Assembly (NCBI RefSeq): GCF_018977255.1
Contig: NW_024704812.1
Location: forward strand, 124,001 to 188,000
Origin: Callorhinchus milii
Lineage: Eukaryota
Reading direction: 5' to 3'
DNA: 64,000 nt
In this document: positions 5,801-63,527 of the stretch, piece by piece
Numbering within the stretch: the first letter of the stretch is position 1
How the letters are laid out: every line of letters begins with the position of its first letter
Translations under genes and position numbers: made by a program
The notes under the pieces: generated by a model
The model's database searches: none
What the model saw: the letters and a program-made list of their open reading frames with translations, nothing else
Told to the model about the DNA's origin: nothing

Positions 5801-8800
5801 TGACACACTGTCCGTGTCAGCCATTTGTTTCCTCACCATGTAAGGGCCTGAATCCTTCTGGGAGACATTGGCAGAGGAAGCCTAAAATATAACCAAACAC
5901 AGTTTAGCTATTCATTAGCAATGTCGTTAGCAGTAAATAATAATAACCATTGCATTTCATACAGTGCCTTATCACGTCTTCATAACATCTCAAAGCGCTT
6001 CACAGGATACACGGTAAAGAGTAGTGACTGTGTGGTTTCATAATAATAATAATCGTTGCATTTGATACAGTGCCTTATCACGTCTTTGAGTCGTATCAAA
6101 GAGGAGCCAATTGCCTAAGGTTTTGCCCTGTCCGGGAAACAAAACCGGATCCTCTCGCTTGAGAGGCGAGGACTCTAACCACTGAGCTACAGGACTGCAC
6201 AGGACTTACTCTGACATCAATGGTCTCGTAGTGTGGTTCACCCTCTGTCTCTTGCTGTGTTTTGGCTGGAAAATAAACAACAACTTGTTTATTCAAAGGC
6301 ACAGCCTCTGATGGTGGGATGGAGGGAACGAGGGACAAATAGGAGGCCGGTGTGGGGTGGGGGTGAGCAGGTCGGAGAGGTAGGGAGGTGCCAGGGCATG
6401 AAGGGGTTTGAAAACGAGTGAGAGGATCTTGAAATCGTAGAAAATCTTGAAAATCTACAAGTTTGTACATTTGCTGAACCGGTTAACTTGGAGAGAAATG
6501 GAGAGGGAGGGACTGATAGAGAGAGAGAGAGAGAGAAAGAGAGAGATTGGCAGTGAGAGATAGGGTTAGAGCCTGACAGAAAGACAAAGAGGGAGCGATT
6601 GAAAGAGAGAGGTGGAGATGGATGGATAGAGACTGATAGAGAGTGAGATGGAGGGTGATAGAGAGGAGATGGTGAAATGGAGTGGGAGAGACTGATAGAG
6701 AGAGAGAGAAAGATGATGGGTCAAGACTGATGGAGGAAGAGTGAGACGGAGAAGATAGAGACTGATTGAGTTTGTGACGGAGGTGGATAGAGACTAACAG
6801 AGGGAGTGTGAGACAGAGGGGAAGAGACTGATAGAGAGAGATGAAGGGGGAGAGACTGACAGTGAAAGAGAGTGAGATGAAGGGGTAGAGACTGATAGAT
6901 GGAGAGGACAGTGAGAGGGTGAGTGGCTGAGGGGGGTCTGGGCTGGTATATAAACTACAGAACATGAAGGTGAAAGGTTTTCCTGTGTATATACGGCCTC
7001 ACCTTCCTTACGTTTCCTGTAAACGTACACCACAGCGAGTGTTGCAATGACCACCACAGCCACAGCCCCCACTATTGTCCCCACTATCAGGGCCACATTC
7101 ACTGCGGAGAGAAACACCTTCACTGTCTCTCTATTAGATTATACTCTCGTAACATAGAGACCACAGCACAGACCTCATGTAAATCATAGCAATCCTCGCA
7201 TTTGATACAGCGCCTTATCACGTCGTTGTAAAGTGTCGTAACTGTATTTTGTCGGCGGAACACAGCAGCCAATTGCGCACAGCGGTGACCCACAAACAGT
7301 CGTGGATTGATTGACCAGATTTTTTGTTTTTTTGGAGGGATTATGACCCCCAGAAAGTGAACCGTCAATTGACTAACAGCGGGTTCCTACCTACTGCTGA
7401 TAAACAGAGGTGCGCGTCTGTGTGTGTATGTGTGTGTGTGTGTCTGTTGTCTGCGGTGGGGTGTACATGTCTGTCTGTGAGTTTGTGTGTGTCTGTGACT
7501 GTGTAAGTGTGTGTGTCTGTGTGTGTGTCTGTGTGTGTGTCAACATATCATAACTTACCTCCGCCTTTCAAAGTCACGTCAAATTGGAAGAAGTTCTCTC
7601 CCATTGCGTTAGTGACACGGCATTGATATGTGCCCTGATCGGTTGCCTGGAATTTACTGATGAGCAGTTTAGAGAAGGTTAGTCCTGAGGTGATGTTGAA
7701 CTTGCCGTCAGAGCCAGTGATGGAGTTGTCTTCCTTCGACCATGTAAAGTGTGCGGGCAGCAGGCCAGGGTCTGACACCCGCACTGTGTCTGTCAGTGAC
7801 ACGTCTAAGGTCACATCTGCCTCCTTCCCCACTTCCACCTGAGGCTCAGACCCTGACGCTCTCTGGGGTTTATCTGTGTAACAGCACAGACGGCGTTCAG
7901 CAAAACAGCAACACAGTCACCCCAACAGTCAGTAGGAATAATAATAATCCTCCTGTTTGATACATCGCCTTATCACGCCATCGAGACATCTTAAATCCCA
8001 TCTAAAGACCTTCCTCTTCGACCAACCGCACCTTCAGCCACCCTCCCACCCCAAAACCCACCCCACTGCCCTCCACCCCTCCTGACCACAACTCCCAGCT
8101 CAGGTCCAAAAACCCTGACTGTGCAGCGTCCCGGGACGTGTTTGCGACGTGAAGGGCGCTATACAAGTGTAATTTGTCATCGTTGTTGTTGTTCAGCCCT
8201 CAAGTCCTCACCAATGACTATAGAGCATTGACTGTCAGAGACAACATGGCGTCCAACACATGTGAAGATCTCTCGGGAGCTGAGCTGATCCTTTGTGATG
8301 GTGACATTCCCCTCGTTTGTCTCAATGACAATCGTCTGTCCGACCTTCAGCTGAAGGACAGTGTCTGGCACCCCACCAGCCCAGGAGCACATCAACACCA
8401 ATGCTGTTCCTTTATCTGCTGCTCCGCATGTGATCTGCTGTGTGGGAGCCCCTTGAACAAGGCAAAGACAAACAGTCCAGTTATTGGCTCCACCTTGAGT
8501 TGTCCCCACCCTCGCCCGGCTCCACTGGCTCCCCATCCCTCAGAGGATACTGTTCCAGTTCCTGGTGCTCAGCTTTAAAGCCCTCCATGGCCTCACTCCT
8601 CCCTCCCTACCTCTGTGACCTCCTCACCCCTGACCAACCTCCCCTTATTGGGCTCCTCCTTGCTCCATGACCCCCGCCCGGCCCTCCTCACCATCAGCGG
8701 TCGGGCCTTCAGTCTCTCTGCCCCCACCCTCTGAAACTCCCACAATCCCTCTGCCACATCTCCCTCACCTCCTTCAAAACTTATCTCAAGATCCTCCTCT

Positions 8801-18827: not shown

Positions 18828-21800
18828 CTACTTCTGGTGCCATTACGACGTAAATTGTGATAAATATCTTTTTTGGTGCTTTCCAAGGTCCTGAAACACA
18901 ATGCAGATCGGGACAGACCATTACTAACAACAACATTTTACACTGAACCTTTCACATCAGGAGGACGTCCCAAGGACCTGGACAGTCAGGGATTTGGATC
19001 TGAGCTGTGGGTTGGGATCAGGACGGGGTGGATGGTGGCGAGGGAGGGGTTAGGAAGGCGACCAGGTTGAAAAGGAAAGTCTTGTGACAGGCCTTGAAGG
19101 AGGTGAGGGAGTGATGGGGTGGGATGGAGGGACTGTGGGATGGAGTTCCAGAGGGTGGGGCAGAGTAACTGAAGGCCAACCGATGGTGGGGCAGGTGAGG
19201 CGGGGGATGTGAAGCAGGCCGGAGCCCGCTGAGCAGAGAGAGCGGACAGGTTGTTAGGGGGTATGGGAGCTGCAGAGTTAGTTCTGGATGATCTGCAGTT
19301 TGCACAGGGAGCGTTGGGGAGGCCGACAAGCAGGGAGGGGCAAAGTCAAGCCTGTTTGTGGTGAACACATGGATGAGGGCCTCGGTGGCCTGCGGTGAGA
19401 GACAGTGGCGGAGCCGGGCAATATGGCGGAGGTGGGGAAGGCATATCAGGTCATGGCATGGATGAGGGGATGAAGGACAGTTTAGGGTCGTAAAGGACAG
19501 AGTTGGGACAGCAAGAGACTGAGCCGGGCTGACACACTGTCCGTGTCAGCCATTTGTTTCTCACCATGTAAGGGCCTGAATCCTTCTGGGAGACATTGGC
19601 AGAGGAAGCCTAAAATATAACCAAACACAGTTTAGCTATTCATTAGCAATGTCGTTAGCAGTAAATAATAATAACCATTGCATTTCATACAGTGCCTTAT
19701 CACGTCTTATAACATCTCAAAGTGCTTCACAGGATACACGGTAAAGAGTAGTGACTGTGTGGTTTCATAATAATAATTGTTGCATTTGATACAGTGCTTA
19801 TCACGTCTTTGAGTCGTATCAAAGGGGAGCCAATTGCCTAAGGTTTTGCCCTGTCCGGGAAACAAAACCGGATCCTCTCGCTTGAGAGGCGAGGGCTCTA
19901 ACCACTGAGCTACAGGACTGCACAGGACTTACTCTGACATCATGGTCTCGTAGTATGGTTCACCCTCTGTCTCTTGCTGTGTTTTGGCTGGAAAATAAAC
20001 AACAACTTGTTTATTCAAAGGCACAGCCTCTGATGGTGGGATGGAGGGAACGAGGGACAAATAGGAGGCCGGTGTGGGGTGGGGGTGAGCAGGTCAGAGA
20101 GGTAGGGAGGTGCCAGGCATGAAAGGGTTTGAAACGGGTGAGAGTATCTTGAAATCGTAGAAAATCTTGAAAATAAACAAGAGTTTGGTGCTGAACCGGT
20201 GAACCTGGAGAGAAACGGAGAGGGAGGGACTGACAGAGAGAGAGATAGGGGTAGAGCCTGACAGAAAGAGAGAAAGACAAAGGAGGAGTGATTGATAGCG
20301 AGAGGGGGAGATGGATGGATAGAGACTGACAGAGAGTGAGATGGAGGTTGATAGAGAGAGAGGGGTAGAAACTGATAGAAAAGAGTGGGTGAAATGGAGA
20401 GGGAGAGACTGAGAGTGATGGAGGGTGATAGAGAGAAGGGGGAGAGACTGATAGAAAAGAGAGGGTGAAATGGAGGGGGAGAGGCTGATAGAGAGAGAGA
20501 GACAAAGTGGGAGAGACTGATAGTGAAAGAGAGTGAGACGGAGGGGCTAGAGACAGATAGAGAGAGACGGAGGGGTAGAGACTGACAGAGAGAGAGGACA
20601 GTGAGAGGGTGAGTGGCTGAGGGGGGTCTGGACTGGTATATAAACAACAGAACATGAAGGTGAAAGGTTTTCCTGTGTATATACGGCCTCACCTTCCTTA
20701 CGTTTCCTGTAAACGTACACCACAGCGAGTGTTGCAATGACCACCACAGCCACAGCCCCCACTATTGTCCCCACTATCAGGGCACATTCACTGCGGAGAG
20801 AAACACTTCACTGTCTCTCTATTAGATTATACTCTCGTAACACAGAGACCACAGCACAGACCTCATGTAAATCATATCAATCCTCGCATTTGATACAGTG
20901 CCTTATCACGTCGTTGTAAAGTGTAGTAACTGTGTATTTGTGGGTGGAACACGGCAGCCAATTGCACACAGCAGTGTCCCACAAACAGTCGTGGATTGAT
21001 TGACCAATTTTTGTTCTTTTGGAGGATTATGATGACCTCCGGAAGTGAACCGTCAATTGACTAACAGCGGGTTCCTACCTACTGCTGATAAACAGAGGTA
21101 CGCGTCTGTGTGTGTATGTGTGTCTATGTGTGTCTGTGTGTGTGTGTCTGTATGTGTGTGTGTCTGTGGGTGTGTGTCTGCGGTGGGGTGTGTATGTCTG
21201 TCTGTGAGTTTGTGTGTGTCTGTGACTGTGTAAGTGTGTGTGTGTGTGTGTGTGTGTCAACATATCATAACTTACTCCGCCTTTCAAAGTCACGTCAAAT
21301 TGGAAGAAGTTCTCTCCCATTGCGTTAGTGACATGGCATTGATATGTGCCCTGATCGGTTGCCTGGAATTCACTGATGAGCAGTTTAGAGAAGGTTGGTC
21401 CTGAGGTGATGTTGAACTTGCCGTCAGAGCCAGTGATGGAGTTGTCTTCCTTCGACCATGTAAAGTGTGCAGGCAGCAGGCCAGGGTCTGACACCCGCAC
21501 TGTGTCTGTCAGTGACACGTCTAAGGTCACATCTGCCTCCTTCCCCACTTCCACCTGAGGCTCAGACCCTGACGCTCTCTGGGGTTTATCTGTGTAACAG
21601 CACAGACAGTGTTCAGCAAAACAGCAACACAGTCACCCCAACAGTCAATAGGAATAATAATAATCCTCCCGTTTGATACAGCGCCTTATCACGCCATCGA
21701 GACATCTTAAATCCCATCTAAAGACCTTCCTCTTCGACCAACCGCACATTCAGCCACCCTCCCACCCCCAACCACCACCACCCCCCCTGTCCTCCACCCT

Positions 21801-32472: not shown

Positions 32473-32602
32473 NNNNNNNNNNNNNNNNNNNNNNNNNNNN
32501 NNNNNNNNNNNNNNNNNNNNNNNNNNNNNNNNNNNNNNNNNNNNNNNNNNNNNNNNNNNNNNNNNNNNNNNNNNNNNNNNNNNNNNNNNNNNNNNNNNNN
32601 NN
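32473..32602. other. Assembly gap (130 N)
   Basis: N run. Confidence 0.99.
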
Positions 32603-33085: not shown

Positions 33086-34967
33086 CTACTTCCTGGTGCC
33101 ATTACGACGTAAATTGTGATAAATATCTTTTTGGTGCTTTCCAAGGTCCTGAAACACAATGCAGATCGGACAGACCATTACTAACAACATTTTACACTGA
33201 ACCTTTCACATCAGGAGGACGTCCCAAGGACCTGGACAGTCAGGGATTTGGATCTGAGCTGTGGGTTGGGATCAGGACGGGGTGGATGGTGGCGAGGTAG
33301 GGGTTAGGAAGGTGACCAGGTTGAAGAGGAAAGTCTTGTGACAGGCCTTGAAGGAGGTGAGGGAGTGATGGGGTGGGATGGAGGGACTGTGGGATGGAGT
33401 TCCAGAGGGTGGGGCAGAGTAACTGAAGGCCCAACCGATGGTGGGGCAGGTGAGGCGGGGGATGTGAAGCAGGCCGGAGCCCGCTGAGCAGAGAGAGCGG
33501 ACAGGTTGTTAGGGGGTATGGGGAGCTGCAGAGTTAGTTCTGGATGATCTGCAGTTTGTAGAGGGAGGCGTTGGGGAGGCCGACAAGCAGGGAGGGGGCA
33601 AAGTCAAGCCTGTTTGTGGTGAACACATGGATGAGGGCCTCGGTGGCCTGCGGTGAGAGACAGTGGCGAAGCCGGGCAATATGGCGGAGGTGGGGAAGGC
33701 ATATCAGGTCATGGCACGGATGAGGGGATGAAGGACAGTTTAGGGTCGTAAAGGACAGAGTTGGGACAGCAAGAGACTGAGCCGGGCTGACACACTGTCC
33801 GTGTCAGCCATTTGTTTCCTCACCATGTAAGGGCCTGAATCCTTCTGGGAGACATTGGCAGAGGAAGCCTAAAATATAACCAAACACAGTTTAGCTATTC
33901 ATTAGCAATGTCGTTAGCAGTAAATAATAATAACCATTGCATTTCATACAGTGCCTTATCACGTCTTCATAACATCTCAAAGCGCTTCACAGGATACAAC
34001 AACAACAACAACAAGATTCCATTTATAAAGCGCCTTTCACGTCAGGAGGACGTCCCAAGCGCTGCACAGTTGGGTCATGACCCGAGCAGGGGGGAAATGG
34101 TCAGGGTAAGGGGAGGGAAGGGAGGGAGCGAGGAGGGGGAAGAGAGTCGAGAGGGGAGCTGAAGGCTCGGTCAAAGAGAAAGGTTTTGAGACCGGCCTTG
34201 AAGGAGGAAAGGGAGGAAGCGGCGAAGGCACTGGGGGATAGAGTTCCAGAGCCTGGGGGCTGAGAGGCTGAAGGCCCGACCACCGATGGTAGGGCGATTG
34301 GGGCGGGGGACGTGGAGCAGACCGGAGCCAGAGGAACGGAGGGTACGGGCAGGTAGGTAGGGGGATAGTAGGTCGGAGAGGTAGGAGGGAGCGAGGCCGT
34401 GAATGGCCTTGTAGGTGAGGATGAGGATCTTGAAATCTTGATACACGGTAAAGAGTAGTGACTGTGTGGTTTCAAAAATAATAATAATCGTTGCATTTGA
34501 TACAGTGCCTTATCACGTCTTTGAGTCGTATCAAAGGGGAGTCAATTGCCTAAGGTTTTGCCCTGTCCGGGAAACAAAACCGGATCCTCTCGCTTGAGAG
34601 GCGAGGGCTCTAACCACTGAGCGACAGGACTGCACAGCACTTACTCTGACATCAATGGTCTCGTAGTATGGTTCACCCTCTGTCTCTTGCTGTGTTTTGG
34701 CTGGAAAATAAACAACAACTTGTTTATTCAAAGGCACAGCCTCTGATGGTGGGATGGAGGGAACGAGGGACAAATAGGAGGCCGGTGTGGGGGCGGTGGG
34801 GGGTGAGCAGGTCGGAGAGGTAGGGAGGTGCCAGGGCATGAAGGGGTTTGAAAACGAGTGAGAGGATCTTGAAATCGTAGAAAATCTTGAAAATATACAA
34901 GAGTTTGTACATTTGCTGAACCGGTGAACTTGGAGAGAAACGGAGAAGGAGGCACTGATAGAGAGAC

Positions 34968-34998
<31 letters not shown>

Positions 34999-36252: not shown

Positions 36253-39200
36253 TGTGGGTGTGTGTCTGTGTGTGTGTCAAAATATCATAACTTACCTCCG
36301 CCTTTCAAAGTCACGTCAAATTGGAAGAAGTTCTCTCCCATTGCGTTAGTGACACGGCATTGATATGTGCCCTGATCGGTTGCCTGGAATTTACTGATGA
36401 GCAGTTTAGAGAAGGTTAGTCCTGAGGTGATGATGAACTTGCCGTCAGAGCCAGTGATGGAGTTGTCTTCCTTCGACCATGTAAAGTGTGCGGGCAGCAG
36501 GCCAGGGTCTGACACCCGCACTGTGTCTGTCAGTGACACGTCTAAGGTCACATCTGCCTCCTTCCCCACTTCCACCTGAGGCTCAGACCCTGACGCTCTC
36601 TGGGGTTTATCTGTGTAACAGCACAGACAGTGTTCAGCAAAACAGCAACACAGTCACCCCAACAGTCAGTAGGAATAATAATAATCCTCCTGTTTGATAC
36701 AGCGCCTTATCACGCCATCGAGACATCTTAAATCCCATCTAAAGACCTTCCTCTTCGACCAACCGCACATTCAGCCACCCTCCCACCCCAAAACCCACCC
36801 CCCCCTGCCCTCCACCCCTCCTGACCCCAACTCCCAGCTCAGGTCCAAAAACCCTGACTGTGCAGCGTCCCGGGATGTGTTTGCGACGTGAAGGGCGCTA
36901 TACAAGTGTAATTTGTCATCGTTGTTGCTGTTCAGCCCTCAAGTCCTCACCAATAACTATAGAGCATTGACTGTCAGAGACAACATGGCGTCCAACACAT
37001 GTGAAGATCTCTCGGGAGCTGAGCTGATCCTTTGTGATGGTGACATTCCCCTCGTTTGTCGCATTGACAATCGTCTGTCCGACCTTCAGCTGAAGGACAG
37101 AGTCTGGCACCCCACCAGCCCAGGAGCACATCAACACCAATGCTGTTCCTTTATCTGCTGCTCCGCATGTGATCTGCTGTGTGGGAGCCCCTTGAACAAG
37201 GCAAAGACAAACAGTCCAGTTATTGGCTCCACCTTGAGTTGTCCCCACCCTCGCCCGGCTCCACTGGCTCCCCATCCCTCAGAGGATACTGTTCAAGATC
37301 CTGGTGCTCAGCTTTAAAGCCCTCCATGGCCTCACTCCTCCCTCCCTACCTCTGTGACCTCCTAATCCCTGACCAACCGGTCCGCTCCCTCTGCTTAGCG
37401 GGCTCCGGCCTGCTCCATGTTCCCCGCCCGCCCATCCCCTTCAGCCTCTCTGACCCACCCTCTGAAACTCCCACAATCCCTCTGCCATGCCTCCCTCACC
37501 TCCTTCGAAACCTATCTCAAGATCCTCCTCTTCGACAGACCGTGCCTTCGGTCACCCTCCTACACCCATCTCCCTGCCCTCCAACCCTCCTGATAGCAAC
37601 CTCCAGCTCAGATGTGGGTCCCTGACTGTCCAGCGCCTTGAGACATCCTCCTGACGTGAAAGCCACTGTGTAAATGCCATGTGTTGTTATTTAGACAGTG
37701 CCAATTTTGACTGAGATCTAACTCACTGTACACGAGGATTGAAACCTTCTCCGTGTGGCTAATCGTGGTGTAATCATTCTTCACATTGCAAGTGTAATCC
37801 CCGCTGTTGTTGAACGTGAGGCTCTCTATAGGCAGCTGTGAGGTGTTGCCGGCAATGACTGTGGTGTTATGTGTCCACCTGTAGTTACACTCTGGGAAAC
37901 ATTTCGTCTGACAGTTGAGCGTCACTAAATCTCCCTCCTTCCCACAGTACTGTCCTGGGACCAAACTGTCACATATCACTTGCCCACTCATATATACTGT
38001 GGGTGGATCAGGGCCATCTGAAAGAAAAACATTAAGTGATGACATAGATAGATAAATGGGTGGCAGATGATAGTGTGAGAGAAACAGCCTTTTTACATGT
38101 ATCACAGACCTCCGACTGTTTGTGGGTCCCTCCTGTGCGCAATTGGCTGCCGTCCCCCGACCCACCCACCCCACCATTGGCGGGAGAGACTTCAGCCACT
38201 CTGCCCCAACCTCTGGAATCCTATCCCCCAGTCATTCCGCTTCACGCCCTCCTTAGCCTCCTTCAAGTCACGCCTCAAGACCCTCCTCTTCGACCATGCC
38301 ATCGGCCATCCCCCTTCCCCGCCCCTCCCTTCTCCCCCCGTGACTCCAGCTCGGGTCTGAAATGCTGTCACTGTCCAGTGCCTTGGGACATCCTCCCGAT
38401 GTGAAACACGCTATACAAATGTAATCCTGTTGTTGTTGTTGTGTTTCATCCATAAAATATACAGTCAATTCACTTTACAGTATATTCTGTGAAGTGATTT
38501 GAGACGTGAGGAGGTGTTTTTTTTGGAGGGGTTAATACATTCGGAAAAGTGATCTGGCAATCGACTAACAAGGGTTCCCGCTTACTGTTAGGTAAACAAC
38601 AAAATACAACAACAATAATATTACATTTATAGGGCGTCCTTAACGTCGGGAGGACGTCCCAAGACATTGGCGCTGCTAAACAGTGGGGTGTATGTGTGTG
38701 GGGGGTGGGGGTGGGGGCGAGTGTTGGGTGGAGTAATGTACCTGCCTAAGCTTTCGTCCTGACCTGCGCGGGAATCAAACCCAGGTCCTCTCGCTTGATA
38801 AGGCGATATATCAAGTGCAAGAATGATTATTATTCTGATGATCATGACTATGATCATTATTATTGTTATTATCTTTACTGTTATTGCAGCTCAGGTCACG
38901 TGAGGCTGACTTTGGGTCATGGAGTTTAAAGCGAGTCGGGGTTCCTGCTCCTGGTCCCTAAACTCCCTCTCGGGCTCAAGTGTGGGTGTTGCAGTCTGGT
39001 GGGGAGATTAGGTTTGTCTGTGGGGCCCTCTACAGTCAAGTGGCCGATTGACACTCAGATAGTGATGGGATCTTTAACCTGAACAGGCAGATAGTTTAAC
39101 GTCTCATCCAAACAGCGGCTCTTCAATGATAATAACAATAGTGGAGTCCTGTTGCTCAGTGGTTAGAGCATTTGCCTCGTAAGTGAACTTGAGTTCAATT

Positions 39201-42200
39201 CCCATCAGGGTGCGAATGCTTGGGCAAGTTTCCTTACTCCACACGCCTGATAATAACCCCTCCAGAAAGAAACTAATAGTAAATTGGGCACTTCAATCCA
39301 CGGCTGTTTTGGGACGACGCTGTGTGCAATTGTGTTTCACCCACAAATATACAGTCAATTCACTTTACAATATATTCTGTGAAGCATTTTGAGTTGTCTC
39401 AAAGACGTAAAGAGCGCGGCATCAAATGAAAGGTTTATTATATTATTTATAGGGCAAAACATTGGGCAAGTTTCCTTACTCCGCACGCCTCTGTTTACCT
39501 CGCAGTGTGTGGGGACCCAGTTGTTAGTCGACTGATGGATCGCTTTTCCGAGGGTAAAAATTCCTTCAAAAAATAATATTAATGAATTGGTCCCTGAATC
39601 CCCAACTGTTTGTGGGACACTGCTGTGTGCAATTGGTTGACATTTTATGGAGTGGTTATTACCTCCAGAAAGTGATCCGGCAATGAACTGACAAGTAGGT
39701 TCCCACTTACTGCAGGTCAGCAGAGCCATGTCTATGTGTGTTTCTATGAGTGGAGGAAGGACTATATGAGTTCCAAGTACTGACGTGAGGCTTGAACCCA
39801 CAACCTTCTGACTTATAGAGAGCTGAGCCAGGCTGGAACAAGTAGGGATATACGTGGGCCAACTGCACTGTCCTGTTCAGCTCACGTTGATCTGGTTTTA
39901 ACACCACAGCAAATATACTCACAAGTTATCACCAGCTTCACTGGTTTGCTGCTGTCACTGTTCACCGGGTTACTGGCCGCGCAGATAAACCCTCCACTGT
40001 CGTTCCTGTGTACGGGGCTGATTGTCAGAGTGCTATTAGCTGCAGACAGTGTGTAACGTGGGGTTACAGGTAACGGGTGTCCATCCAGTGCCCAGGAATA
40101 GGTGGGGAACAATCCCATCGCTGTACACCTCAATGTCGTTGTGTCTTTATTCTCGATAAATATCTCCTTGTCTGGACTCAGGCTGATGCTTACATTGGAC
40201 AGCAGAGCTGTAAGATAAAGTGTTTCATTTCATCCGGATTTACTTTACTTAACACAAAGCTGTTCTGCTTCAGTTCAAGATCCTGGTCCTCACCTTCAAT
40301 GTCCTCTACAACCTCACTCCTCTTTCCTTACCTCCGCTCCCTCTGCTCAGCGGGCTCCGGCCTGCTTCATGCCCCCCGCCCACCTGCCCCACCATCAGCG
40401 GTTGGGCCTTCAGCCTCTCTGCCCCAATCCACGACTGTTTGTGGGACACTGCTGTGTGCAATTGGCTGCAGAGTTTCGCCCACAAAATAGACCGGCAATT
40501 CACTTTACAGTATATCGTCCCAAAATACATCACTTTGCACTTCTCCACATTAAACTTCATCATGTCTGCCCATGTTACCAGTCTGTCTATGTCCTCTTGC
40601 AGTCTGTTACTCTCCTCCTCACTGTTTACTACTTTTCTTAGCTTAGTATCATGTGTGTGGCTCCTGATCACACACTAAACTCTGTACCCCCATCACCCCA
40701 GTCCTGCCCAGGCTCCAAACTTGGCAATTGTGCTCTCTATACCCAAGTCCAGGCCACCTTAAAGACCCATTTCAAGGCCTTCCTCTTCGACCGGCCATGC
40801 CTCCAGTCATCCTTCTATTCCAACCCTACCCGCCCTCCACCCCTCCTTATCCCAACCCCCACCTCGAGTGCGGATCCCTGACTATCCAGTGCCTTGGGAC
40901 GTCGTCCTGATATGAAAGCCACTGTTGTTGTTTACACCATGACATTTTTGACTGAGATAACTAACTCACTGTACACGAGGATTGAAACCTTCTCCGTGCG
41001 GCTAATCGTGGTGTAATCATTCTTCACATTGCAAGTGTAATCCCCGCTGTTGTTGAACGTGAGGCTCTCTATAGGCAGCTGTGAGGTGTTGCCGGCAATG
41101 ACTGTGGTGTTATGTGTCCACCTGTAGTTACACTCTGGGAAACATTTCGTCTGACAGTTGAGGGTCATCAAATCTCCCTCCTTCCCACAGTACTGTCCTG
41201 GGACCAAACTGTCACATATCACCTGCCCACTCACAATAAAGGTGAGTGGATCAGGGCCATCTGAAAGAAAAAGCATTAAACTATGGCATAGATAGATAAA
41301 TGGATGGCAGATGATAGTGTGAGAGAAACAGTCTTTTTACATGTATCACAGACCTCTGACTGTTTGTGGGTCGCTGCTGTGTGCAATTGGCTGCTGCGTT
41401 TTGCTCATAACATATAGTCAATTCACTTTACAGTGTATTCTGTGAAGCGTTTCAGTCGTCCAGAAGACGTGAAAAGCGCTGTATCAAATGCAAGGATTAT
41501 TATATTATTGATAGAGAAAAACGTCGGCCAAGTTTCCCTACTCCCAAACACACCGTCTGTTTACTGAGCAGTAATTAGGAACCCGGTTATTAGTCGATTG
41601 GTGGGAATCAAACCAAAGTGCTCTCACTTGCGAGGTGAGGGCTCCAACCACGACAGGACCCCACTGTTTGTTTCTCTATTCACAGCATCAAACCCCAATG
41701 TAGAATATTCCAGCATTGCATTGGCGCTTCAGTCTGGACTACATGAGTTCCAAGTACTGACGTGAGGCCACAACCTTCTGACTTATAGAGAGCTGAGCCA
41801 GGCTGGAACAAGTAGGGATATACGTGGGCCAACTGCACTGTCCTGTTCAGCTCACGTTGATCTGGTTTTAACACAACAGAGCAAATATACTCACAAGTTA
41901 TCACCAGCTTCACTGGTTTACTGCTGTCACTGCCCACCAGGTAACTGGCCGTGCAAATAAACCCTCCACTGTCGCTCCTGTGTACGGGGCTGATTGTCAG
42001 AGTGCTATTATCTGCAGACAGTGTGTAACGTGGGGTTAGAGGTAACGGGTTTCCATCCAGTGCCCAGGAATAGGTGGGGAACGATCCCATCGCTGTACAT
42101 CTCAGTGTCACTGTGTCTTCATTCTCGATAAATATCTCCTTGTCTGGACTCAGGCTGATGCTCACATTGGACACCAGGGCTGTAAGATAACGCATTTCAT

Positions 42201-44663
42201 TTCATTCAGAAACTTGTTCCAATTCACTTCACTGACACAGATCTGTTCAGAGTCACTTTGCTGAACCCTACACTTTATTTCTGACGCTGTTTGTTATGAT
42301 TCACTGTTTATTCAGGTCTCAGTCTGGCTCATTTGGTAGCACAATTTTATGGTTTAAAGTCACACTCTGGGAGCTCACAGTCCAGGTTTATTGGCTTAAT
42401 GAATGAGATGAAATGGGCCCTTTACTGCAGTCTATCAGGAAGGCAGAGCAAGTGTGTCTCTGCTCCTCTCTCTCTCCTCCTCTCTCCCCACCACCCACTC
42501 CCCAACCCCACTCTCTCATTCCCTCTCTCCCCTCTCACTCTTCCCGACCTTGCCCTCTCTTTCCCACTCTTTCCCCCTTCTCTTTCCCCTTCTCTCCCTT
42601 CCTCTCTCCCCTCTCCCTTCCCCTCTCTCCCCCTTATCTTTCATGCCTCCCTCTCTTCTCCCTCTCTCTCTCCCCTCTCTCTCTCCCAATCACTCTCTCC
42701 CAATCAGCAGTGGTAGGAGCCCAAGGACACAGTTGGTAAGAGACTCATTTGCCTTCCTGACAGACTGCAGTAAGGGCTCTGCTCGCTGGATTCTCCCAAA
42801 CGCCGGCTCCTGCCACTGCCCTGTGAGGACGTTCCCCAGGGAGGGAGGGAGGGGTGGGGGAGAGGAAGTTGGAACATTGCAAATGGTCGCCGGCCGCACA
42901 AAATCACCAACGGGCAGCTGACAGCCCATGTACCGCCTGTTGGACCACACTGAGCTGAATGAATGAAATGAAATCGGTCCGGGGGCCATCACACCCTCCT
43001 GTTTGCCCCTCGGCCCCTTCCGCTCCATCATCGGTGGCTGTATTTTCAGCTGTTACGCCCTGAAAGTCTGTCACTCTCTCCCTGTCAATCCCTCCGTCTC
43101 CCCCTCTCGTTCCCCACCTTCAAATCCCACCTAATATCCTTCCTTTTTGATTGTGTTTACCGTCACCTCCCCCCTCCCTCTCCCACCGGCTCGGGGTCAG
43201 ATTCTGCCCCTATCAAGTGCTCTCGGACGCTACCCCACGTGAGGGATGTGGTGTAAATGTAAGTTGTTGTTGTTGTTTACTCACTGTGAACACGCAGTTG
43301 TAAAGCTGCTGAGGCTGATCCGTGGTTTAATTCAAACACAGTCACTGAGTACGAACCGGAATCAGCCGGAGTCACTGTGTCCAGACGTAGAGTGGCATTG
43401 TTGGGGTAAAGCTCAGCCCGACCCTGGTAGTCTCCATAGTACTTCACTGTTGTTCCCTGTGCTGCTGCGATTGTGGAGCTGGTGTTGACTGTCCATGTTA
43501 TAGTAAAACTTCCCTGTTCACTGGGCATTACCAGGAAGTACACAGATTGTCCGGCTGTGGCTTCTATGTGACTCTCAGTGACGGTCAGACTGAAAGCTCC
43601 CACCTGCTCTGTAACACACAACACACACAACAGTCAATCTCCAGGAAATCTCACAATATAAAAATAATAATATTAATAATAATCCTGCAGTTATTGTTCA
43701 AGCACTCGTCTCGCAAGTGAGGAGACCCAGATTTGATCCCCGGGCGGAAGGGCGAAACGTTGGGCAGTTTCCTTACTTCACACACACGCCTCTGTTTGCT
43801 TCGCAGTAAGTAGGAACCCGGTTGTTAACCGATTAGAGGCTTTATCGGGATAACAATTCCTTCAAAAAAGTAATAAATTGATGACTCAAACCATGACTGT
43901 TTGCGGGCACTACAGTGCACACTGTATAAATGGAATGATTATTAATAGTATAATAATAATCTTTGCATTTCATATAGTGCCTTATCACGTCTTTGAGACG
44001 TCTGAAAGCGCTTCACGGGGTGTAATGTAAATTGAATTATTGTATATTTTGTGGGTGAACCCTTTCAGCCAATTGTACACAATAGTGTCCCACACAGAGC
44101 TGTGGATTGAGTGACCAATTTTTTTTATTTTGAAGGAATTATTATCCCCAGAGAAGCGATCCGCCAACCGACCAACAAGTGGTTCCTACTTATTGTTCGG
44201 TAAATAGAGGCGCGTGTGTGTGGAGTAAGGAAACTTGCCCAACCTCTCGCCCTGTGCCGCCCGGGAATCAAACCCAGGACTCTCACTTGCGAGGCGAGTG
44301 CTCCAACCACTGAGCTACAGGACTCCACAATTCAGAACAATTCTGTGGAAACACGACCTCAGTGAGAGAGTGGGAAACGGGATCCCGAAGGAGACAGACG
44401 GCGGAAGCAGAAAATGTCATTTATTTCAAGATCAAATTGGATAGATTTCTGCAAGAAAATAATATCTCAGGATACAGTATATAGACACACACACACAGAC
44501 ACACAGTATATAGTTTGGGACACGACATGTGTAGCGACTGCCAGGACGGTGGGAGATGAACGAGATGGACCTTTGCTTATGTTGTTACCAGTAACTCACC
44601 CAAATTAGTGACCAGAATGAGCAGAGCAGCCACCAACATCCTCGCGGCTGGAAACCACCACAT
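33086..44663 (-). CDS. Copy C: intact CEACAM/VSIG10L-like activating receptor, 785 aa (SP-V-A-B-A-B-C-D-TM-ITAM tail)
   Basis: 12 exons: 44663-44600, 43608-43285, 42179-41895, 41260-40970, 40207-39923, 38017-37727, 37190-36951, 36610-36296, 35867-35769, 34700-34645, 33868-33824, 33148-33086. Total 2358 nt, open frame, GT-AG boundaries. CEACAM-like hallmarks: Cys-less V domain with GRAELYPNNATL and DSGSY, and the 'ITYGPDP' junction. The CxWxGGxP domain is VSIG10-like. Confidence 0.9.
33999..34439 (-). mobile_element. Young 5'-truncated L2 insertion (441 bp) with GATACA flanking direct repeat
   Basis: Open frame FKILILTYKAIHGLAPSYLSDLLSPYLPARTLRSSGSGLLHVP...APRLWNSIP; (TTG)n tail. Empty site caggatacacgg in copies A and B. 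Confidence 0.9.
34930..35700. repeat. Purine-rich imperfect minisatellite (gagactgatagagagag...) in the TM-cyt1 intron (also 6490-6935, 20210-20620, 50160-50900)
   Basis: Recurrent gactgatagagag units. Intron lengths are 737, 705, 1068 and 1052 nt in A, B, C, D. Confidence 0.9.
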
Positions 44664-48305: not shown

Positions 48306-51300
48306 CTACTTCCTGGTGCCATTACGACGTAAATTGTGATAAATATCTTTTTGGTGCTTTCCAAGGTCCTGAAACACAATGCAGATCGGACAGACCATTA
48401 CTAACAACATTTTACACTGAACCTTTCACATCAGGAGGACGTCCCAAGGACCTGGACAGTCAGGGATTTGGATCTGAGCTGTGGGTTGGGATCAGGACGG
48501 GGTGGATGGTGGCGAGGTAGGGGTTAGGAAGGTGACCAGGTTGAAGAGGAAAGTCTTGTGACAGGCCTTGAAGGAGGTGAGGGAGTGATGGGGTGGGATG
48601 GAGGGACTGTGGGATGGAGTTCCAGAGGGTGGGGCAGAGTAACTGAAGGCCCAACCGATGGTGGGGCAGGTGAGGCGGGGGATGTGAAGCAGGCCGGAGC
48701 CCGCTGAGCAGAGAGAGCGGACAGGTTGTTAGGGGGTATGGGGAGCTGCAGAGTTAGTTCTGGATGATCTGCAGTTTGTAGAGGGAGGCGTTGGGGAGGC
48801 CGACAAGCAGGGAGGGGGCAAAGTCAAGCCTGTTTGTGGTGAACACATGGATGAGGGCCTCGGTGGCCTGCGGTGAGAGACAGTGGCGAAGCCGGGCAAT
48901 ATGGCGGAGGTGGGGAAGGCATATCAGGTCATGGCACGGATGAGGGGATGAAGGACAGTTTAGGGTCGTAAAGGACAGAGTTGGGACAGCAAGAGACTGA
49001 GCCGGGCTGACACACTGTCCGTGTCAGCCATTTGTTTCCTCACCATGTAAGGGCCTGAATCCTTCTGGGAGACATTGGCAGAGGAAGCCTAAAATATAAC
49101 CAAACACAGTTTAGCTATTCATTAGCAATGTCGTTAGCAGTAAATAATAATAACCATTGCATTTCATACAGTGCCTTATCACGTCTTCATAACATCTCAA
49201 AGCGCTTCACAGGATACAACAACAACAACAACAAGATTCCATTTATAAAGCGCCTTTCACGTCAGGAGGACGTCCCAAGCGCTGCACAGTTGGGTCATGA
49301 CCCGAGCAGGGGGGAAATGGTCAGGGTAAGGGGAGGGAAGGGAGGGAGCGAGGAGGGGGAAGAGAGTCGAGAGGGGAGCTGAAGGCTCGGTCAAAGAGAA
49401 AGGTTTTGAGACCGGCCTTGAAGGAGGAAAGGGAGGAAGCGGCGAAGGCACTGGGGGATAGAGTTCCAGAGCCTGGGGCTGAGAGGCTGAAGGCCCGACC
49501 ACCGATGGTAGGGCGATTGGGGCGGGGGACGTGGAGCAGACCGGAGCCAGAGGAACGGAGGGTACGGGCAGGTAGGTAGGGGGATAGTAGGTTGGAGAGG
49601 TAGGAGGGAGCAAGGCCGTGAATGGCCTTGTAGGTGAGGATGAGGATCTTGAAATCTTGATACACGGTAAAGAGTAGTGACTGTGTGGTTTCAAAAATAA
49701 TAATAATCGTTGCATTTGATACAGTGCCTTATCACGTCTTTGAGTCGTATCAAAGGGGAGTCAATTGCCTAAGGTTTTGCCCTGTCCGGGAAACAAAACC
49801 GGATCCTCTCGCTTGAGAGGCGAGGGCTCTAACCACTGAGCTACAGGACTGCACAGCACTTACTCTGACATCAATGGTCTCGTAGTATGGTTCACCCTCT
49901 GTCTCTTGCTGTGTTTTGGCTGGAAAATAAACAACAACTTGTTTATTCAAAGGCACAGCCTCTGATGGTGGGATGGAGGGAACGAGGGACAAATAGGAGG
50001 CCGGTGTGGGGGCGGTGGGGGGTGAGCAGGTCGGAGAGGTAGGGAGGTGCCAGGGCATGAAGGGGTTTGAAAACGAGTGAGAGGATCTTGAAATCGTAGA
50101 AAATCTTGAAAATATACAAGAGTTTGTACATTTGCTGAACCGGTGAACTTGGAGAGAAACGGAGAAGGAGGCACTGATAGAGAGACAGAGAGAGAGAGAG
50201 AGATTGGTAGTGAGAGATAGGGTTAAAGCCTGACAGAAAGACAAAGAGGGAGCGATTGAAAGAGAGAGGGGGAGATGGATGGATAGAGACTGATAGAGAG
50301 TGAGATGGAGGGTGATAGAGAGACAGGGGTAGAGGCTGATAGAAAGGAGAGGGTGAAATGGAGTGGGAGAGACTGATAGAGAGAGAGAGAAAGATGGAGG
50401 GGGAGAGACTGATGGAGGAAGAGTGAGACGGAGAGGGTAGAGACTGATTGAGTTTGTGATGGAGGTGGATAGAGACTAATAGAGGGAGTGTGAGACAGAG
50501 GGGAAGAGACTGACAGAGTGAGATAAAGAGGGAGAGACTGAAAGTGAGAGAGAGTGAGACGGAGGAGGAGTGATTGATAGCGAGAGGGGGAGATGGATGG
50601 ATAGAGACTGACAGAGAGTGAGATGGAGGGTGATAGAGAGAGAGGGGTAGAAACTGATAGAAAAGAGTGGGTGAAATGGAGAGGGAGAGACTGAGAGTGA
50701 TGGAGGGTGACAGAGAGAAGGGGTAGAGACTGATAGAAAAGAGAGGGTGAAATGGAGGGGGAGAGGCTGATAGAGAGAGAGACAAAGTGGGAGAGACTGA
50801 TAGTGAAAGAGAGTGAGATGGAGGGGCTAGAGACAGATAGAGAGAGACGGAGGGGTAGAGACTGGCAGAGAGAGAGGACAGTGAGAGGGTGAGTGGCTGA
50901 GGGGGTCTGGACTGGTATATAAACAACAGAACATGAAGGTGAAAGGTTTTCCTGTGTATATACGGCCTCACCTTCCTTACGTTTCCTGTAAACGTACACC
51001 ACAGCGAGTGTTGCAATGACCACCACAGCCACAGCCCCCACTATTGTCCCCACTATCAGGGCCACATTCACTGCGGAGAGAAACACCTTCACTGTCTCTC
51101 TATTAGATTATACTCTCGTAACACAGAGACCACAGCACAGACCTCATGTAAATCATAGCAATCCTCGCATTTGATACAGCGCCTTATCACGTTGTTGTAA
51201 AGTGTAGTAACTGTGTATTTTGTGGGCGGAACACAGCAGCCAATTGCGCACAGCGGTGACCCACAAACAGTCGTGGATTGATTGACCAGATTTTTTGTTT

Positions 51301-51416
51301 TTTTGGAGGGATTATGACCCCAGAAAGTGAACCGTCAATTGACTAACAGCGGGTTCCTACCTTCTGCTGATAAACAGAGGTGCACATCTGTGTGTGTATG
51401 TGTGTCTATGTGTGTC

Positions 51417-51450
<34 letters not shown>

Positions 51451-63464: not shown

Positions 63465-63527
63465 CTACTTCCTGGTGCCATTACGACGTAAATTGTGATA
63501 AATATCTTTCTGGTGCTTTCCAAGGTT
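63465..63527 (-). CDS. Copy E: terminal cytoplasmic exon (NLGKHQKDIYHNLRRNGTRK*); rest of gene lies beyond the right edge
   Basis: Acceptor ttgtgtttcag, then 63 nt homologous to cyt3 of copies A-D (one D>N change and one synonymous change). Confidence 0.82.
   Translation of the reverse strand, partial: NLGKHQKDIYHNLRRNGTRK

What the first reader, a model, noticed from the sequence alone, without database searches (positions are those of the whole stretch)
33086..33868. Hidden ITAM split over two micro-exons: the array encodes activating receptors
Seen: cyt2 (45 nt, ASSANVSQKDSGPYM) and cyt3 (DLGKHQKDIYHNLRRNGTRK*) join in phase 0 to give YMDL-GKHQKDI-YHNL, i.e. YxxL-x7-YxxL. The same exons occur in A (5881-5837, 5161-5099) and D; B (cyt3 frameshifted as assembled) and E (cyt3 only) show them in part. 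Established: this is the ITAM consensus, and an intron at Yx|xL is the usual layout in FcR-gamma/CD3/CD79-type ITAMs. From recall, human CEACAM3 reads YEELLKHDTNIYCRM, which aligns with the same xKHxxxIY spacer. Inference: an expanded family of CEACAM3-like activating or phagocytic receptors in a probable cartilaginous fish, possibly not described.
Basis: partly seen in the sequence, partly recalled or inferred. Interest (0 to 1): 0.88.

Follow-up and report, generated by a model that had tools for sequence, protein, structure and literature searches.

The report
ITAM-like tail of elephant-shark CEACAM genes
The two tiny exons are the real last coding exons of tandemly repeated CEACAM-family immune-receptor genes of the elephant shark, and when spliced they spell an ITAM-like signalling motif; this layout is already known from shark, frog, reptile and mammal CEACAMs and is already in RefSeq gene models, so the finding is correct but largely ordinary.

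Summary
On the minus strand, cyt2 (33868-33824, 45 nt) and cyt3 (33148-33086, 63 nt with TAG) have good splice sites. They join in phase 0 to give YMDL-GKHQKDI-YHNL.

They end a 12-exon gene (unit C): leader, cysteine-free IgV N domain, six further Ig domains, TM, then cyt1-3. The phases are consistent throughout.

The window is Callorhinchus milii. Five named RefSeq-type models and one unnamed model end with this tail, four of them letter for letter.

The tail is homologous to known CEACAM ITAM tails:
- Xenopus Ceacams have the same three exons, phases (1)(0)(0) and ...GPYM|xL...Y(N/H)(N/H)LR.
- Mustelus and Carcharodon CEACAM-like proteins carry YxxL-x7-YxxL.
- I verified the same YM|EL phase-0 split in Mustelus DNA.

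Caveats:
- There is no acidic residue at -1 to -3 of the first Y, so in CEACAM nomenclature this is "ITAM-like".
- Only unit C is fully open as assembled. Units A, B and D carry 1-bp, mostly homopolymer, frameshifts.
- One RefSeq model retains the intron after cyt2.
- Signalling is untested.
- It is an analogue of CEACAM3, not an orthologue.

N-domain exons show 13-20 nonsynonymous and 0 synonymous differences between copies.

Verdict: a new member of a known kind, of modest interest.

The parts
33824..33868 (-). Unit C cyt2 micro-exon, 45 nt, phase 0/0. Encodes ASSANVSQKDSGPYM and carries the first Y of the ITAM-like motif.
   Evidence: ttttag acceptor, gtgagg donor. Present in RefSeq models.
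33086..33148 (-). Unit C cyt3 terminal coding exon, 63 nt including TAG. Encodes DLGKHQKDIYHNLRRNGTRK*. It completes YM|DL and carries YHNL, which is also a YxN Grb2-type site.
   Evidence: Similar to Xenopus cyt3 ELQFPSNDVYNHLRRTPR.
34645..34700 (-). Unit C cyt1, 56 nt, enters in phase 1 and leaves in phase 0. Encodes (A)KTQQETEGEPYYETIDVR, with a YETI (YxxI) motif 20 residues upstream of the proximal ITAM tyrosine.
   Evidence: The upstream Y motif 17-21 aa before the ITAM is described for reptile CEACAMs (PMC13278318).
35769..35867 (-). Unit C transmembrane exon: VNVALIVGTIVGAVAVVVIATLAVVYVYRKRKE. No charged TM residue. Contains GTIVG (GxxxG).
36296..36610 (-). Unit C membrane-proximal Ig exon C2, phase 1/1.
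36951..37190 (-). Unit C Ig exon C1, phase 1/1.
37727..38017 (-). Unit C IgC2 exon B2.
39923..40207 (-). Unit C IgC2 exon A2.
40970..41260 (-). Unit C IgC2 exon B1.
41895..42179 (-). Unit C IgC2 exon A1.
43285..43608 (-). Unit C N-domain exon: IgV-like, no cysteines, GRAELYPNNATLRLD...DSGSYSV.
   Evidence: Diversifying pattern between copies.
44600..44663 (-). Unit C leader exon, MWWFPAARMLVAALLILVTNL, phase-1 donor.
   Evidence: Identical N-terminus in P0001 and P0004.
5837..5881 (-). Unit A cyt2, identical copy.
5099..5161 (-). Unit A cyt3, identical copy.
19565..19609 (-). Unit B cyt2, identical copy.
18828..18890 (-). Unit B cyt3, frameshifted as assembled: one extra A in an A-run and one G lost.
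49044..49088 (-). Unit D cyt2, identical copy.
48306..48368 (-). Unit D cyt3, identical copy.
63465..63527 (-). Unit E cyt3, two mismatches. D>N gives YM|NL, and the motif is kept. The rest of the gene lies beyond the window.
   Evidence: The same variant tail is in XP_042201596.1.

Best explanation
What it is. The region holds the last two coding exons of a Callorhinchus milii CEACAM-family gene. That gene is unit C of a head-to-tail array with a period of about 15 kb on the minus strand.

What it encodes. The mRNA joins TM > cyt1 > cyt2 > cyt3. The product is a type-I membrane protein with a cysteine-free IgV N domain, six further Ig domains, an uncharged TM helix and a 59-residue tail: RKRKEAKTQQETEGEPYYETIDVRASSANVSQKDSGPYMDLGKHQKDIYHNLRRNGTRK. 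The tail carries three tyrosine motifs:
- a membrane-proximal YETI (YxxΦ, endocytic type);
- YMDL-x7-YHNL, an ITAM-like motif whose first YxxL is split Yx|xL by a phase-0 intron;
- a YxN (Grb2-type) site inside the distal half, YHNL.

The exon set is inherited. It is homologous in sequence, exon number and intron phase to the ITAM/ITAM-like tails of other vertebrate CEACAMs.

How it most likely works (inferred, not shown).
1. Ligand- or microbe-driven clustering of the variable N domain occurs.
2. Src-family kinases phosphorylate the two tyrosines.
3. These recruit tandem-SH2 Syk/ZAP70 and single-SH2 effectors (Grb2, and Vav, Nck or PI3K-type proteins).
4. Cell activation and/or uptake of the bound particle follows, as for mammalian CEACAM3/4-type receptors. 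No separate ITAM adaptor chain is needed.

The array looks like the activating or endocytic arm of a paired-receptor family whose N domains are diversifying.
For: Shown directly:
- Splice sites and phases are consistent across 12 exons.
- Pfam finds one V-set domain plus multiple Ig/I-set domains.
- Five named Callorhinchus models (RefSeq or UniRef) and one unnamed model end with this tail, four of them letter for letter; P0001 and P0028 differ by one and two residues. Two of them begin with the predicted leader.
- The best named homologues outside the species are CEACAM-like proteins of sharks, a teleost, frogs and a cat.
- The N exon has no Cys and carries the GRxxxYPNxxLxL...D.G.Y signature. 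CEACAM N domains dominate the PDB hits.

Tail homology:
- The Xenopus Ceacam supplement shows three cytoplasmic exons with phases (1)(0)(0)...EEGPYM | GLQYPSQDTYSEL and ...YQ | ELQFPSNDVYNHLRRTPR.
- Carcharodon XP_041032670.1 has ...YENIP...EEDSTYMGLQQQDLSVYSSL. Mustelus XP_078092387.1 has ...YENIP...ETSNYMELQLQDQSVYNEL.
- In Mustelus genomic DNA the intron falls at YM|EL in phase 0, after a 42-nt micro-exon (L001 60569-60610 | 60734-).
- Permutation test: p<0.0005, and p=0.0085 with the motif residues fixed.

Literature:
- The classical ITAM is always on two exons, with the boundary in the first tyrosine module (PMC4536121).
- The same split is characteristic of CEACAM ITAM/ITAM-like tails (PMC2832619; PMC5112662).
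- Reptile ITAM-CEACAM tails use three exons and have an extra Y motif 17-21 aa upstream (PMC13278318). Here the distance is 20.

Constraint between copies:
- TM plus cytoplasmic exons show 0-1 substitutions in 263 nt between units, against about 1-5% in the flanking introns.
- N exons show 13/0 and 7/0 nonsynonymous/synonymous differences, clustered in the C, C'C'' and FG regions.
Against: - No transcript or protein data were available here. RefSeq models are predictions.
- One model (XP_042201587.1, P0035) reads through the cyt2 donor, giving ...GPYMVRKQMADT..., which destroys the motif.
- Skipping the 56-nt cyt1 would shift the frame to a short tyrosine-poor tail.
- The acidic residue expected at -1 to -3 of the first Y is missing.
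- Units A, B and D contain frameshifting 1-bp indels as assembled. If these are real, most copies in the window are pseudogenes.
- Pairwise BLAST similarity of the tail to the shark tails is weak on its own (E 0.005-0.06).
- N-domain similarity to solved CEACAM structures is weak (E 5e-4 to 0.1), and CD276 scores higher when its two domains are summed.
- Synteny with the CEACAM locus could not be tested.
Confidence: 0.82

Rival explanations
1. The tail acts mainly as an endocytic or adaptor-docking tail rather than as a Syk-coupled activating ITAM. It would use YxxΦ sorting signals, a Grb2 YxN site and hemITAM-style use of one tyrosine. The receptors would internalise ligands or microbes without classical ITAM signalling.
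For: - No acidic residue lies at -1 to -3 of the first Y, so the motif is 'ITAM-like/endocytic' by the definitions in PMC2832619.
- For CEACAM3, Syk is dispensable for uptake of bacteria, and pY230 alone is the main SH2 hub (PMC7026191).
- The 2026 reptile study calls these 'endocytic ITAM motifs'.
- YHNL fits the YxN Grb2 motif noted in Xenopus and marsupial tails.
Against: - Both halves are YxxL with the exact 7-residue spacing required for tandem-SH2 binding.
- That spacing is conserved from chimaera to frog.
- The two readings are not exclusive.
Confidence: 0.3
2. Most of the array is dead. The frameshifts in units A, B and D are real, so the window holds one functional gene (unit C) among young pseudogenes. 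'An array of activating receptors' would then be an overstatement.
For: - Frameshifts lie in the N exon (A, D), in A1 and A2 (D), and in C1, TM, cyt1 and cyt3 (B).
- RefSeq models for this contig are patchy or chimeric, for example 'titin-like, partial' P0003 with out-of-frame stretches, and P0001, which joins unit-B 5' exons to unit-A 3' exons.
Against: - Most of the indels are 1-bp length changes, most of them in short homopolymers (GG>G, TT>T, A5>A6, G4>G3). Substitutions around them are very few. This is the signature of consensus errors in near-identical tandem repeats.
- There are no premature stop substitutions.
- N exons show an excess of nonsynonymous change rather than neutral decay.
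Confidence: 0.3
3. The YxxL-x7-YxxL is a chance juxtaposition produced by joining two short ORF pieces, with no biological meaning.
For: The bare motif is common: 10 six-frame matches in this window against about 4.6 in shuffles, and 0.36% of random 59-aa tails. The paralogue copies are too similar to count as independent conservation.
Against: - The same splice appears in five named RefSeq-type models and one unnamed model.
- Carcharodon and Xenopus share the motif and the 7-residue spacing, and Mustelus and Xenopus the intron position and phase.
- Tail similarity goes beyond the motif residues.
Confidence: 0.02

Closest known systems
Xenopus group 1 and group 2 ITAM/ITAM-like Ceacams, e.g. 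Xtr_Ceacam369, Xla_Ceacam328, Xtr_Ceacam304 (Zimmermann & Kammerer 2016, PMC5112662, Additional file 1)
   Same: - Three cytoplasmic exons with intron phases (1)(0)(0).
- cyt2 ends ...GPYM or ...SSYQ, and cyt3 starts xL, so the first YxxL is split Yx|xL.
- The spacer is 7 residues.
- The distal half reads Y(N/H)(N/H)LR(R/K), including a YxN Grb2-type site.
- cyt1 carries an extra Y motif (IYYNIP / PVYENT here PYYETI).
- The genes are tandemly expanded, with diversifying N domains.
   Different: - The Xenopus motifs have E at -3, so they are true ITAMs by the strict rule. The shark has S at -3 and D at -4.
- The ectodomains differ in Ig number and are only distantly related.
- Xenopus has demonstrated ITIM partners; none was shown here.
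Elasmobranch CEACAM-like ITAM proteins XP_041032670.1 (Carcharodon carcharias) and XP_078092387.1 (Mustelus asterias)
   Same: - YENIP ... (S/N)YM(G/E)L-x7-Y(S/N)(S/E)L.
- The upstream Y lies 21 residues before the proximal ITAM Y in Carcharodon; here it is 20.
- In Mustelus DNA there is a 42-nt micro-exon ending ...NYM, followed by a phase-0 intron, then EL...
   Different: - A different N-domain subfamily, about 30% identity overall.
- A GAIAGIVIAV-type TM.
- Mustelus has additional cytoplasmic exons before and after the core three.
- Carcharodon has D at -3.
Reptile CEACAM1-related ITAM genes (Zimmermann & Kammerer 2026 preprint, PMC13278318)
   Same: The ITAM tail is encoded by three exons. 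A single endocytic-type Y motif lies 17-21 aa upstream of the proximal ITAM tyrosine. Copy number is variable and often expanded.
Human CEACAM3 (and CEACAM4)
   Same: A CEACAM-family receptor that carries its own ITAM-like YxxL-x7-Yxx(M/I) in the ligand-binding chain. It serves as the model for opsonin-independent phagocytosis and for decoy function against CEACAM1-binding microbes.
   Different: - A single IgV domain against seven Ig domains here.
- Four cytoplasmic exons in mammals against three here.
- The distal half is YxxM (a Vav site) against YHNL here.
- It is primate-specific, so not an orthologue.
Classical ITAM signalling subunits (FcRγ, CD3 chains, CD79a/b, DAP12)
   Same: YxxL/I-x7-YxxL/I encoded on two exons, with the boundary inside the first tyrosine module (PMC4536121).
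   Different: Those are short adaptor chains with an acidic TM residue, paired with separate ligand-binding chains, and they have D/E/N at -3. Here the motif sits on the multi-Ig receptor itself, with an uncharged TM and no acidic residue at -3.

Membership tests
CEACAM (CEA gene family, IgSF) | N-terminal IgV-like domain lacking the canonical intradomain disulfide | tested here: met
   The N exon 43608-43285 encodes 107 residues with no cysteine. Pfam V-set matches residues 33-129.
CEACAM (CEA gene family, IgSF) | N-domain sequence closest to CEACAM N domains | tested here: inconclusive
   PDB phmmer: CEACAM1, 8, 6, 5, 3 and 15 N domains make up most hits, but E is only 5e-4 to 0.1. CD276 and CAR also score. 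The named full-length homologues in other species are mostly 'CEACAM-like'.
CEACAM (CEA gene family, IgSF) | One exon per Ig domain, all in phase 1, with alternating A/B-type IgC2 exons, then a TM exon and small cytoplasmic exons | tested here: met
   The exons N, A1, B1, A2, B2, C1, C2 and TM are all phase 1/1 with AG/GT boundaries. cyt1 is 56 nt; the literature gives a 53-bp cyt exon 1 for CEACAM1.
CEACAM (CEA gene family, IgSF) | ITAM-type tail exon set with phases (1)(0)(0) and the first YxxL split by a phase-0 intron | tested here: met
   for the window. for Xenopus. for Mustelus genomic DNA. for the permutation test.
CEACAM (CEA gene family, IgSF) | Location in the conserved CEACAM neighbourhood (LIPE, BCL3, CD79A and similar marker genes) | not testable with these tools
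All 64 kb of the window lie inside the array.
Canonical ITAM | Two YxxL/I modules separated by 6-8 residues in a cytoplasmic tail | tested here: met
   YMDL-GKHQKDI-YHNL, with a 7-residue spacer, 37 residues after the TM stop-transfer RKRKE.
Canonical ITAM | Acidic (D/E, or N) residue at -1 to -3 of the first tyrosine | tested here: not met
   The sequence is K-D-S-G-P-Y: S at -3, D at -4. By PMC2832619 this makes it 'ITAM-like'.
Canonical ITAM | [quoted passage not shown] | tested here: met
   YM|DL, phase 0. The rule is stated in PMC4536121.
Canonical ITAM | Tyrosine phosphorylation and tandem-SH2 (Syk/ZAP70) recruitment | not testable with these tools
   Needs biochemistry.
CEACAM3 orthologue | Single IgV ectodomain, four cytoplasmic exons, YxxL-x7-YxxM, primate-restricted gene | tested here: not met
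   Seven Ig domains, three cytoplasmic exons and a distal YHNL. Mammalian features are taken from PMC2832619 and PMC13278318.
Paired (activating/inhibitory) receptor set | A partner gene with a near-identical ligand-binding domain but an inhibitory tail | tested here: inconclusive
   - Callorhinchus P0005/P0037 (XP_042202604/5), on another scaffold, is 84-88% identical over its aligned part to the array protein (IgC/C1/C2 and a related TM).
- Its tail differs, with D(F/L)YA(Q/K)V repeats like sawshark P0006.
- Its N domain is missing from the models.
- The motif is not a canonical ITIM (D at -2).

The most novel reading that the evidence does not exclude
The array is the activating or endocytic arm of a CEACAM paired/decoy-receptor system in a holocephalan. 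Its N domains would be under positive selection, and its partner would be the scaffold-separate gene (XP_042202604-type) whose tail carries DxYAxV repeats. If so, the pathogen-driven 'entry receptor versus ITAM decoy' arms race described for mammals, reptiles and frogs was already running in the common ancestor of jawed vertebrates. Alternatively it was reinvented in chimaeras by shuffling ITAM exons onto a different ectodomain subfamily.
Probability: 0.3. Interest if true: 0.55.

Novelty: new member of a known kind. Interest (0 to 1): 0.3.

Why it matters
The finding extends the ITAM-type CEACAM tail to the most basal living jawed-vertebrate lineage that has a genome. Exon by exon, the three cytoplasmic exons, phases (1)(0)(0), the Yx|xL split, the 7-residue spacer and the upstream Y motif about 20 residues away are all present. 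This supports a single ancient origin of the cytoplasmic exon set.

The excess of nonsynonymous change in the N exon, set against an invariant tail, suggests these receptors are in use and evolving under ligand or pathogen pressure. That makes the elephant shark a usable outgroup for the CEACAM decoy-receptor hypothesis.

It does not reveal a new kind of signalling module, and the proteins are already in RefSeq as predictions under misleading names (VSIG10-like, titin-like, PSG4-like).

Tried and rejected
- A homologue search restricted to C2+TM+tail found only Callorhinchus paralogues. The tail is too short for word-based retrieval. Distant tails were reached through the full-length search and a published supplement.
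- An exact-protein look-up of the Carcharodon model found nothing on record. Mustelus worked.
- Pairwise BLAST of TM+tail against the shark proteins was collinear but weak (E 0.005-0.06). I replaced it with a permutation test over eight known tails.
- tblastn of alternative tails against the window found no vestigial exons. The queries were the P0037/P0006 DxYAxV type, the shark CEACAM1-like VVYAQP...DYAELKF type and the Carcharodon ITAM type. I therefore rejected the idea that each unit can splice to either tail.
- No AATAAA or ATTAAA lies in the 483 nt between the stop codon and the N run, so the 3' end is undefined.
- Literature searches for CEACAM with 'elephant shark' or 'Callorhinchus' gave nothing relevant.
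The CEACAM3 review confirms only Y230/Y241, that is an 11-residue offset. KH is absent from all intermediate taxa, so I treat it as coincidence.
- I considered other IgSF families suggested by the RefSeq names (VSIG10, titin, hemicentin, PSG, FcRL, CD22). I rejected them because of the cysteine-free N domain, the exon phases and the tail homology.
- I deliberately did not fetch the 260-kb Callorhinchus contig or the P0005 scaffold, to respect the rule on the N runs.
Full report
**Observation**

Reading the minus strand shows two well-formed micro-exons.
- cyt2 is ttttag|GCTTCC...CCTTACATG|gtgagg, at 33868-33824 (45 nt).
- cyt3 is tttcag|GACCTTGGA...AGGAAGTAG, at 33148-33086 (63 nt including the stop).

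They translate to ASSANVSQKDSGPYM and DLGKHQKDIYHNLRRNGTRK*.

Exact copies of cyt2 lie at 5881, 19609 and 49088. Exact copies of cyt3 lie at 5161 and 48368. A two-mismatch cyt3 lies at 63527, and an indel-bearing one at 18890-18828.

**Gene context**

Upstream on the same strand I reconstructed a complete gene, unit C, from open frames and AG/GT boundaries.

| Exon | Coordinates | Note |
|---|---|---|
| Leader | 44663-44600 | |
| N | 43608-43285 | |
| A1 | 42179-41895 | |
| B1 | 41260-40970 | |
| A2 | 40207-39923 | |
| B2 | 38017-37727 | |
| C1 | 37190-36951 | |
| C2 | 36610-36296 | |
| TM | 35867-35769 | donor in phase 1 |
| cyt1 | 34700-34645 | 56 nt, restores phase 0 |
| cyt2 | 33868-33824 | phase 0 |
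| cyt3 | 33148-33086 | phase 0 |

All Ig exons are phase 1/1.

The 785-aa product has one V-set domain and six further Ig domains (Pfam). It has an uncharged TM helix and the tail RKRKEAKTQQETEGEPYYETIDVRASSANVSQKDSGPYMDLGKHQKDIYHNLRRNGTRK.

**Identity**

A homologue search placed the window in Callorhinchus milii.
- Proteins P0001 (XP_042201590.1, 'VSIG10-like'), P0002 (XP_042201595.1, 'CEACAM5-like'), P0003 ('titin-like, partial'), P0004, P0026 (XP_042201582.1) and P0028 (XP_042201596.1) all end with this tail. P0028 carries the unit-E variant YMNL, and P0001 and P0028 read EPHYETI where the others read EPYYETI.
- P0001 and P0004 start with the leader I predicted.
- The cyt2>cyt3 splice is thus already in public annotation, though under uninformative names.
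- One model, XP_042201587.1, instead reads through the cyt2 donor (...GPYMVRKQMADT...).

**Is it a CEACAM?**
- The N exon has no cysteine and carries GRAELYPNNATLRLD...DSGSYSV.
- Among solved structures, CEACAM N domains make up most of the (weak) hits.
- Many of the best named relatives in other species are CEACAM-like proteins of sawshark, horn shark, bamboo shark, white shark, basking shark and smooth-hound. A glassfish, a poison frog and a tiger also appear.
- Exon phases and the A/B alternation fit the family.
- Synteny could not be tested.

**Is the tail homologous to known ITAM tails?**

Yes, on three lines of evidence.

1. *Xenopus.* The supplement of Zimmermann & Kammerer 2016 lists Xenopus ITAM Ceacams with three cytoplasmic exons and phases (1)(0)(0). 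Examples are cyt1 ...PSQIYYNIPNTAA, cyt2 AHPAIEEGPYM, cyt3 GLQYPSQDTYSELKP*, and cyt3 ELQFPSNDVYNHLRRTPR. The shark tail is (1) ...EPYYETIDVR (0) ...DSGPYM (0) DLGKHQKDIYHNLRRNGTRK*.
2. *Sharks.* White-shark and smooth-hound CEACAM-like proteins end ...YENIP...STYMGLQQQDLSVYSSL and ...YENIP...SNYMELQLQDQSVYNEL. In the Mustelus genomic locus, the exon ending ...NYM (L001 60569-60610, 42 nt) is followed by a phase-0 intron and an exon starting EL... (60734-). The preceding YENIP exon (56632-56696) enters in phase 1 and leaves in phase 0.
3. *Permutation test.* Against eight published or annotated tails the test gives p<0.0005. It still gives p=0.0085 when the Y and L/I residues of all three motifs are held fixed.

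The literature states two relevant rules:
- Classical ITAMs are always split over two exons within the first tyrosine module (PMC4536121).
- CEACAM ITAM/ITAM-like motifs show this split by phase-0 introns (PMC2832619).

The reptile study reports three cytoplasmic exons and an extra Y motif 17-21 residues upstream (PMC13278318). Here YETI is 20 residues upstream.

**Qualifications on 'ITAM'**

The bare pattern is common by chance. The strict consensus requires D/E at -1 to -3 of the first Y, and here the sequence is K-D-S-G-P-Y. By the CEACAM field's own convention this is an 'ITAM-like' (non-canonical) motif. The distal YHNL is also a YxN Grb2-type site, which is noted as conserved in frog and marsupial tails.

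**The array**

The window touches six units: N exons at 145, 13867, 28671, 43608 and 58796, and a sixth gene's cyt3 at 63527.
- Only unit C is fully open.
- Unit A has indels in the N exon and at the leader donor.
- Unit B has indels in C1, TM, cyt1 and cyt3.
- Unit D has indels at the 3' end of N and in A1 and A2.
- Most of the indels are 1-bp length changes, most of them in short homopolymers, with few surrounding substitutions. This looks like consensus error in near-identical repeats, but real young pseudogenes cannot be excluded.
- Unit A has six Ig domains rather than seven.

**Selection**
- Between units, TM plus cytoplasmic exons differ at 0-1 of 263 nt, while the flanking introns differ by about 1-5%.
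- The N exon shows 13 nonsynonymous and 0 synonymous differences for C against A, and 7/0 for C against B. The IgC exons show pS>pN. Fisher's test gives p=0.011, or 0.0006 for the pooled comparison.
- Across eight Callorhinchus N domains, the variable positions cluster at 31-40, 48-57 and 89-101. By position in a V-set fold these are the C, C'C'' and FG regions. Residues 1-30 (apart from position 13) and 58-88 do not vary among the six N domains that align without an indel.
- This is the pattern described for ligand- or pathogen-binding CEACAM N domains.

**A possible partner**

Callorhinchus P0005/P0037, on another scaffold, is 84-88% identical over its aligned part to the array protein (IgC/C1/C2 and a related TM). 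Its tail, however, carries D(F/L)YA(Q/K)V repeats. The closest elasmobranch protein, sawshark P0006 (44% identical, same domain order), has the same repeat tail. No trace of that tail, or of a CEACAM1-type tail, exists in the window.

The ITAM-like array may therefore have arisen by joining this ectodomain subfamily to ITAM exons. That would give a paired set, but the partner's N domain and the function of its motif are unknown.

**Mechanism (inferred)**
1. Clustering occurs through the variable N domain.
2. Src-family kinases phosphorylate the tail tyrosines.
3. Syk/ZAP70 bind through their tandem SH2 domains to pYMDL-x7-pYHNL, and/or single-SH2 effectors are recruited (Grb2 at pYxN, and Vav, Nck or PI3K-type proteins as for CEACAM3; PMC7026191).
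4. YETI may act as a YxxΦ sorting signal.

The uncharged TM fits a receptor that signals through its own tail rather than through an adaptor chain.

**Novelty**

ITAM-bearing CEACAMs are documented in mammals, reptiles, amphibians and teleosts. A CEACAM with an ITAM 'from cartilaginous fish to humans' was asserted in 2013 on the basis of skate ESTs (PMC3628338). RefSeq already holds these elephant-shark proteins. No paper in the searchable library describes this array. I therefore rate it a new member of a known kind, of modest interest.

Noticed in passing
window 43285-43608, 28348-28671, 13544-13867, 58472-58796: N-domain exons differ between units almost only by nonsynonymous changes: 13/0 for C against A and 7/0 for C against B. 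The IgC exons show more synonymous than nonsynonymous change per site. Variable residues cluster in the predicted C, C'C'' and FG regions. This suggests diversifying selection on the ligand-binding face.
   Followed up: partly
window 18198-18347, 32473-32602, 47693-47822: Three N runs of 130-150 nt each sit at the same relative place, about 481-484 nt downstream of the stop codon of units B, C and D. They are not random gaps.
   Followed up: no
units A (5099-15145), B (18828-29812), D (48306-59832): Frameshifting 1-bp indels, mostly in short homopolymers, lie in otherwise near-identical exons: N and leader donor in A; C1, TM, cyt1 and cyt3 in B; N, A1 and A2 in D. They are probably assembly consensus errors in a tandem repeat, but young pseudogenes are possible.
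   Followed up: partly
window 34950-35700 (minus strand), and the same intron in other units: The TM-cyt1 intron holds a long CT-rich, imperfectly repeated tract. It gives a spurious 452-aa ORF (34531-35889) full of SLSLS/PLSL. Its length differs by about 365-405 nt between units.
   Followed up: no
window 9919-12456 (unit A) versus 37727-42179 (unit C): Units differ in Ig-domain number. Unit A has N-A-A-B-C1-C2 (six Ig domains; its first A exon ends ...KPVALTIQ). Units B, C and D have N-A-B-A-B-C1-C2 (seven). RefSeq P0002 and P0035 show the A-A-B form.
   Followed up: partly
proteins P0005/P0037 (Callorhinchus, other scaffold) and P0006 (Pristiophorus japonicus): A sister gene type with a highly similar ectodomain and TM carries a tail of repeated D(L/F/M)YA(Q/K/R)V..K units, not a canonical ITIM. 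The Callorhinchus isoform models appear to run out of frame through later repeat units (LQILRIYTLK...). This may be the partner of the ITAM-like array.
   Followed up: partly
window 33600-33868 and 33824-35867 (minus strand): Two alternative tails are possible. Read-through of the cyt2 donor gives ...GPYMVRKQMADTDSVSARLSLLLSQLCPLRP*; a near-identical read-through tail, from another unit, is in XP_042201587.1. Skipping the 56-nt cyt1 shifts the frame to ...RKRKEGFLCQCLPEGFRPLHGPWKAPKRYLSQFTS*, which is reminiscent of the long/short switch made by the 53-bp exon of CEACAM1.
   Followed up: partly
window e.g. 33950-34060, 34500-34540, 35975-36000 (minus strand): Introns are littered with copies of a SINE-like element sharing the core ...GACGTGA(T/A)AAGGC(G/A)CT(G/T)TAT(C/A)AAATGCAA... 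This is consistent with a cartilaginous-fish genome.
   Followed up: no
RefSeq model P0001 versus window units A and B: XP_042201590.1 combines the N and A1 exons of unit B with the B, C1 and cyt1 (EPHYETI) exons of unit A. It is therefore a chimeric prediction spanning two neighbouring genes, probably because of the frameshifts.
   Followed up: partly
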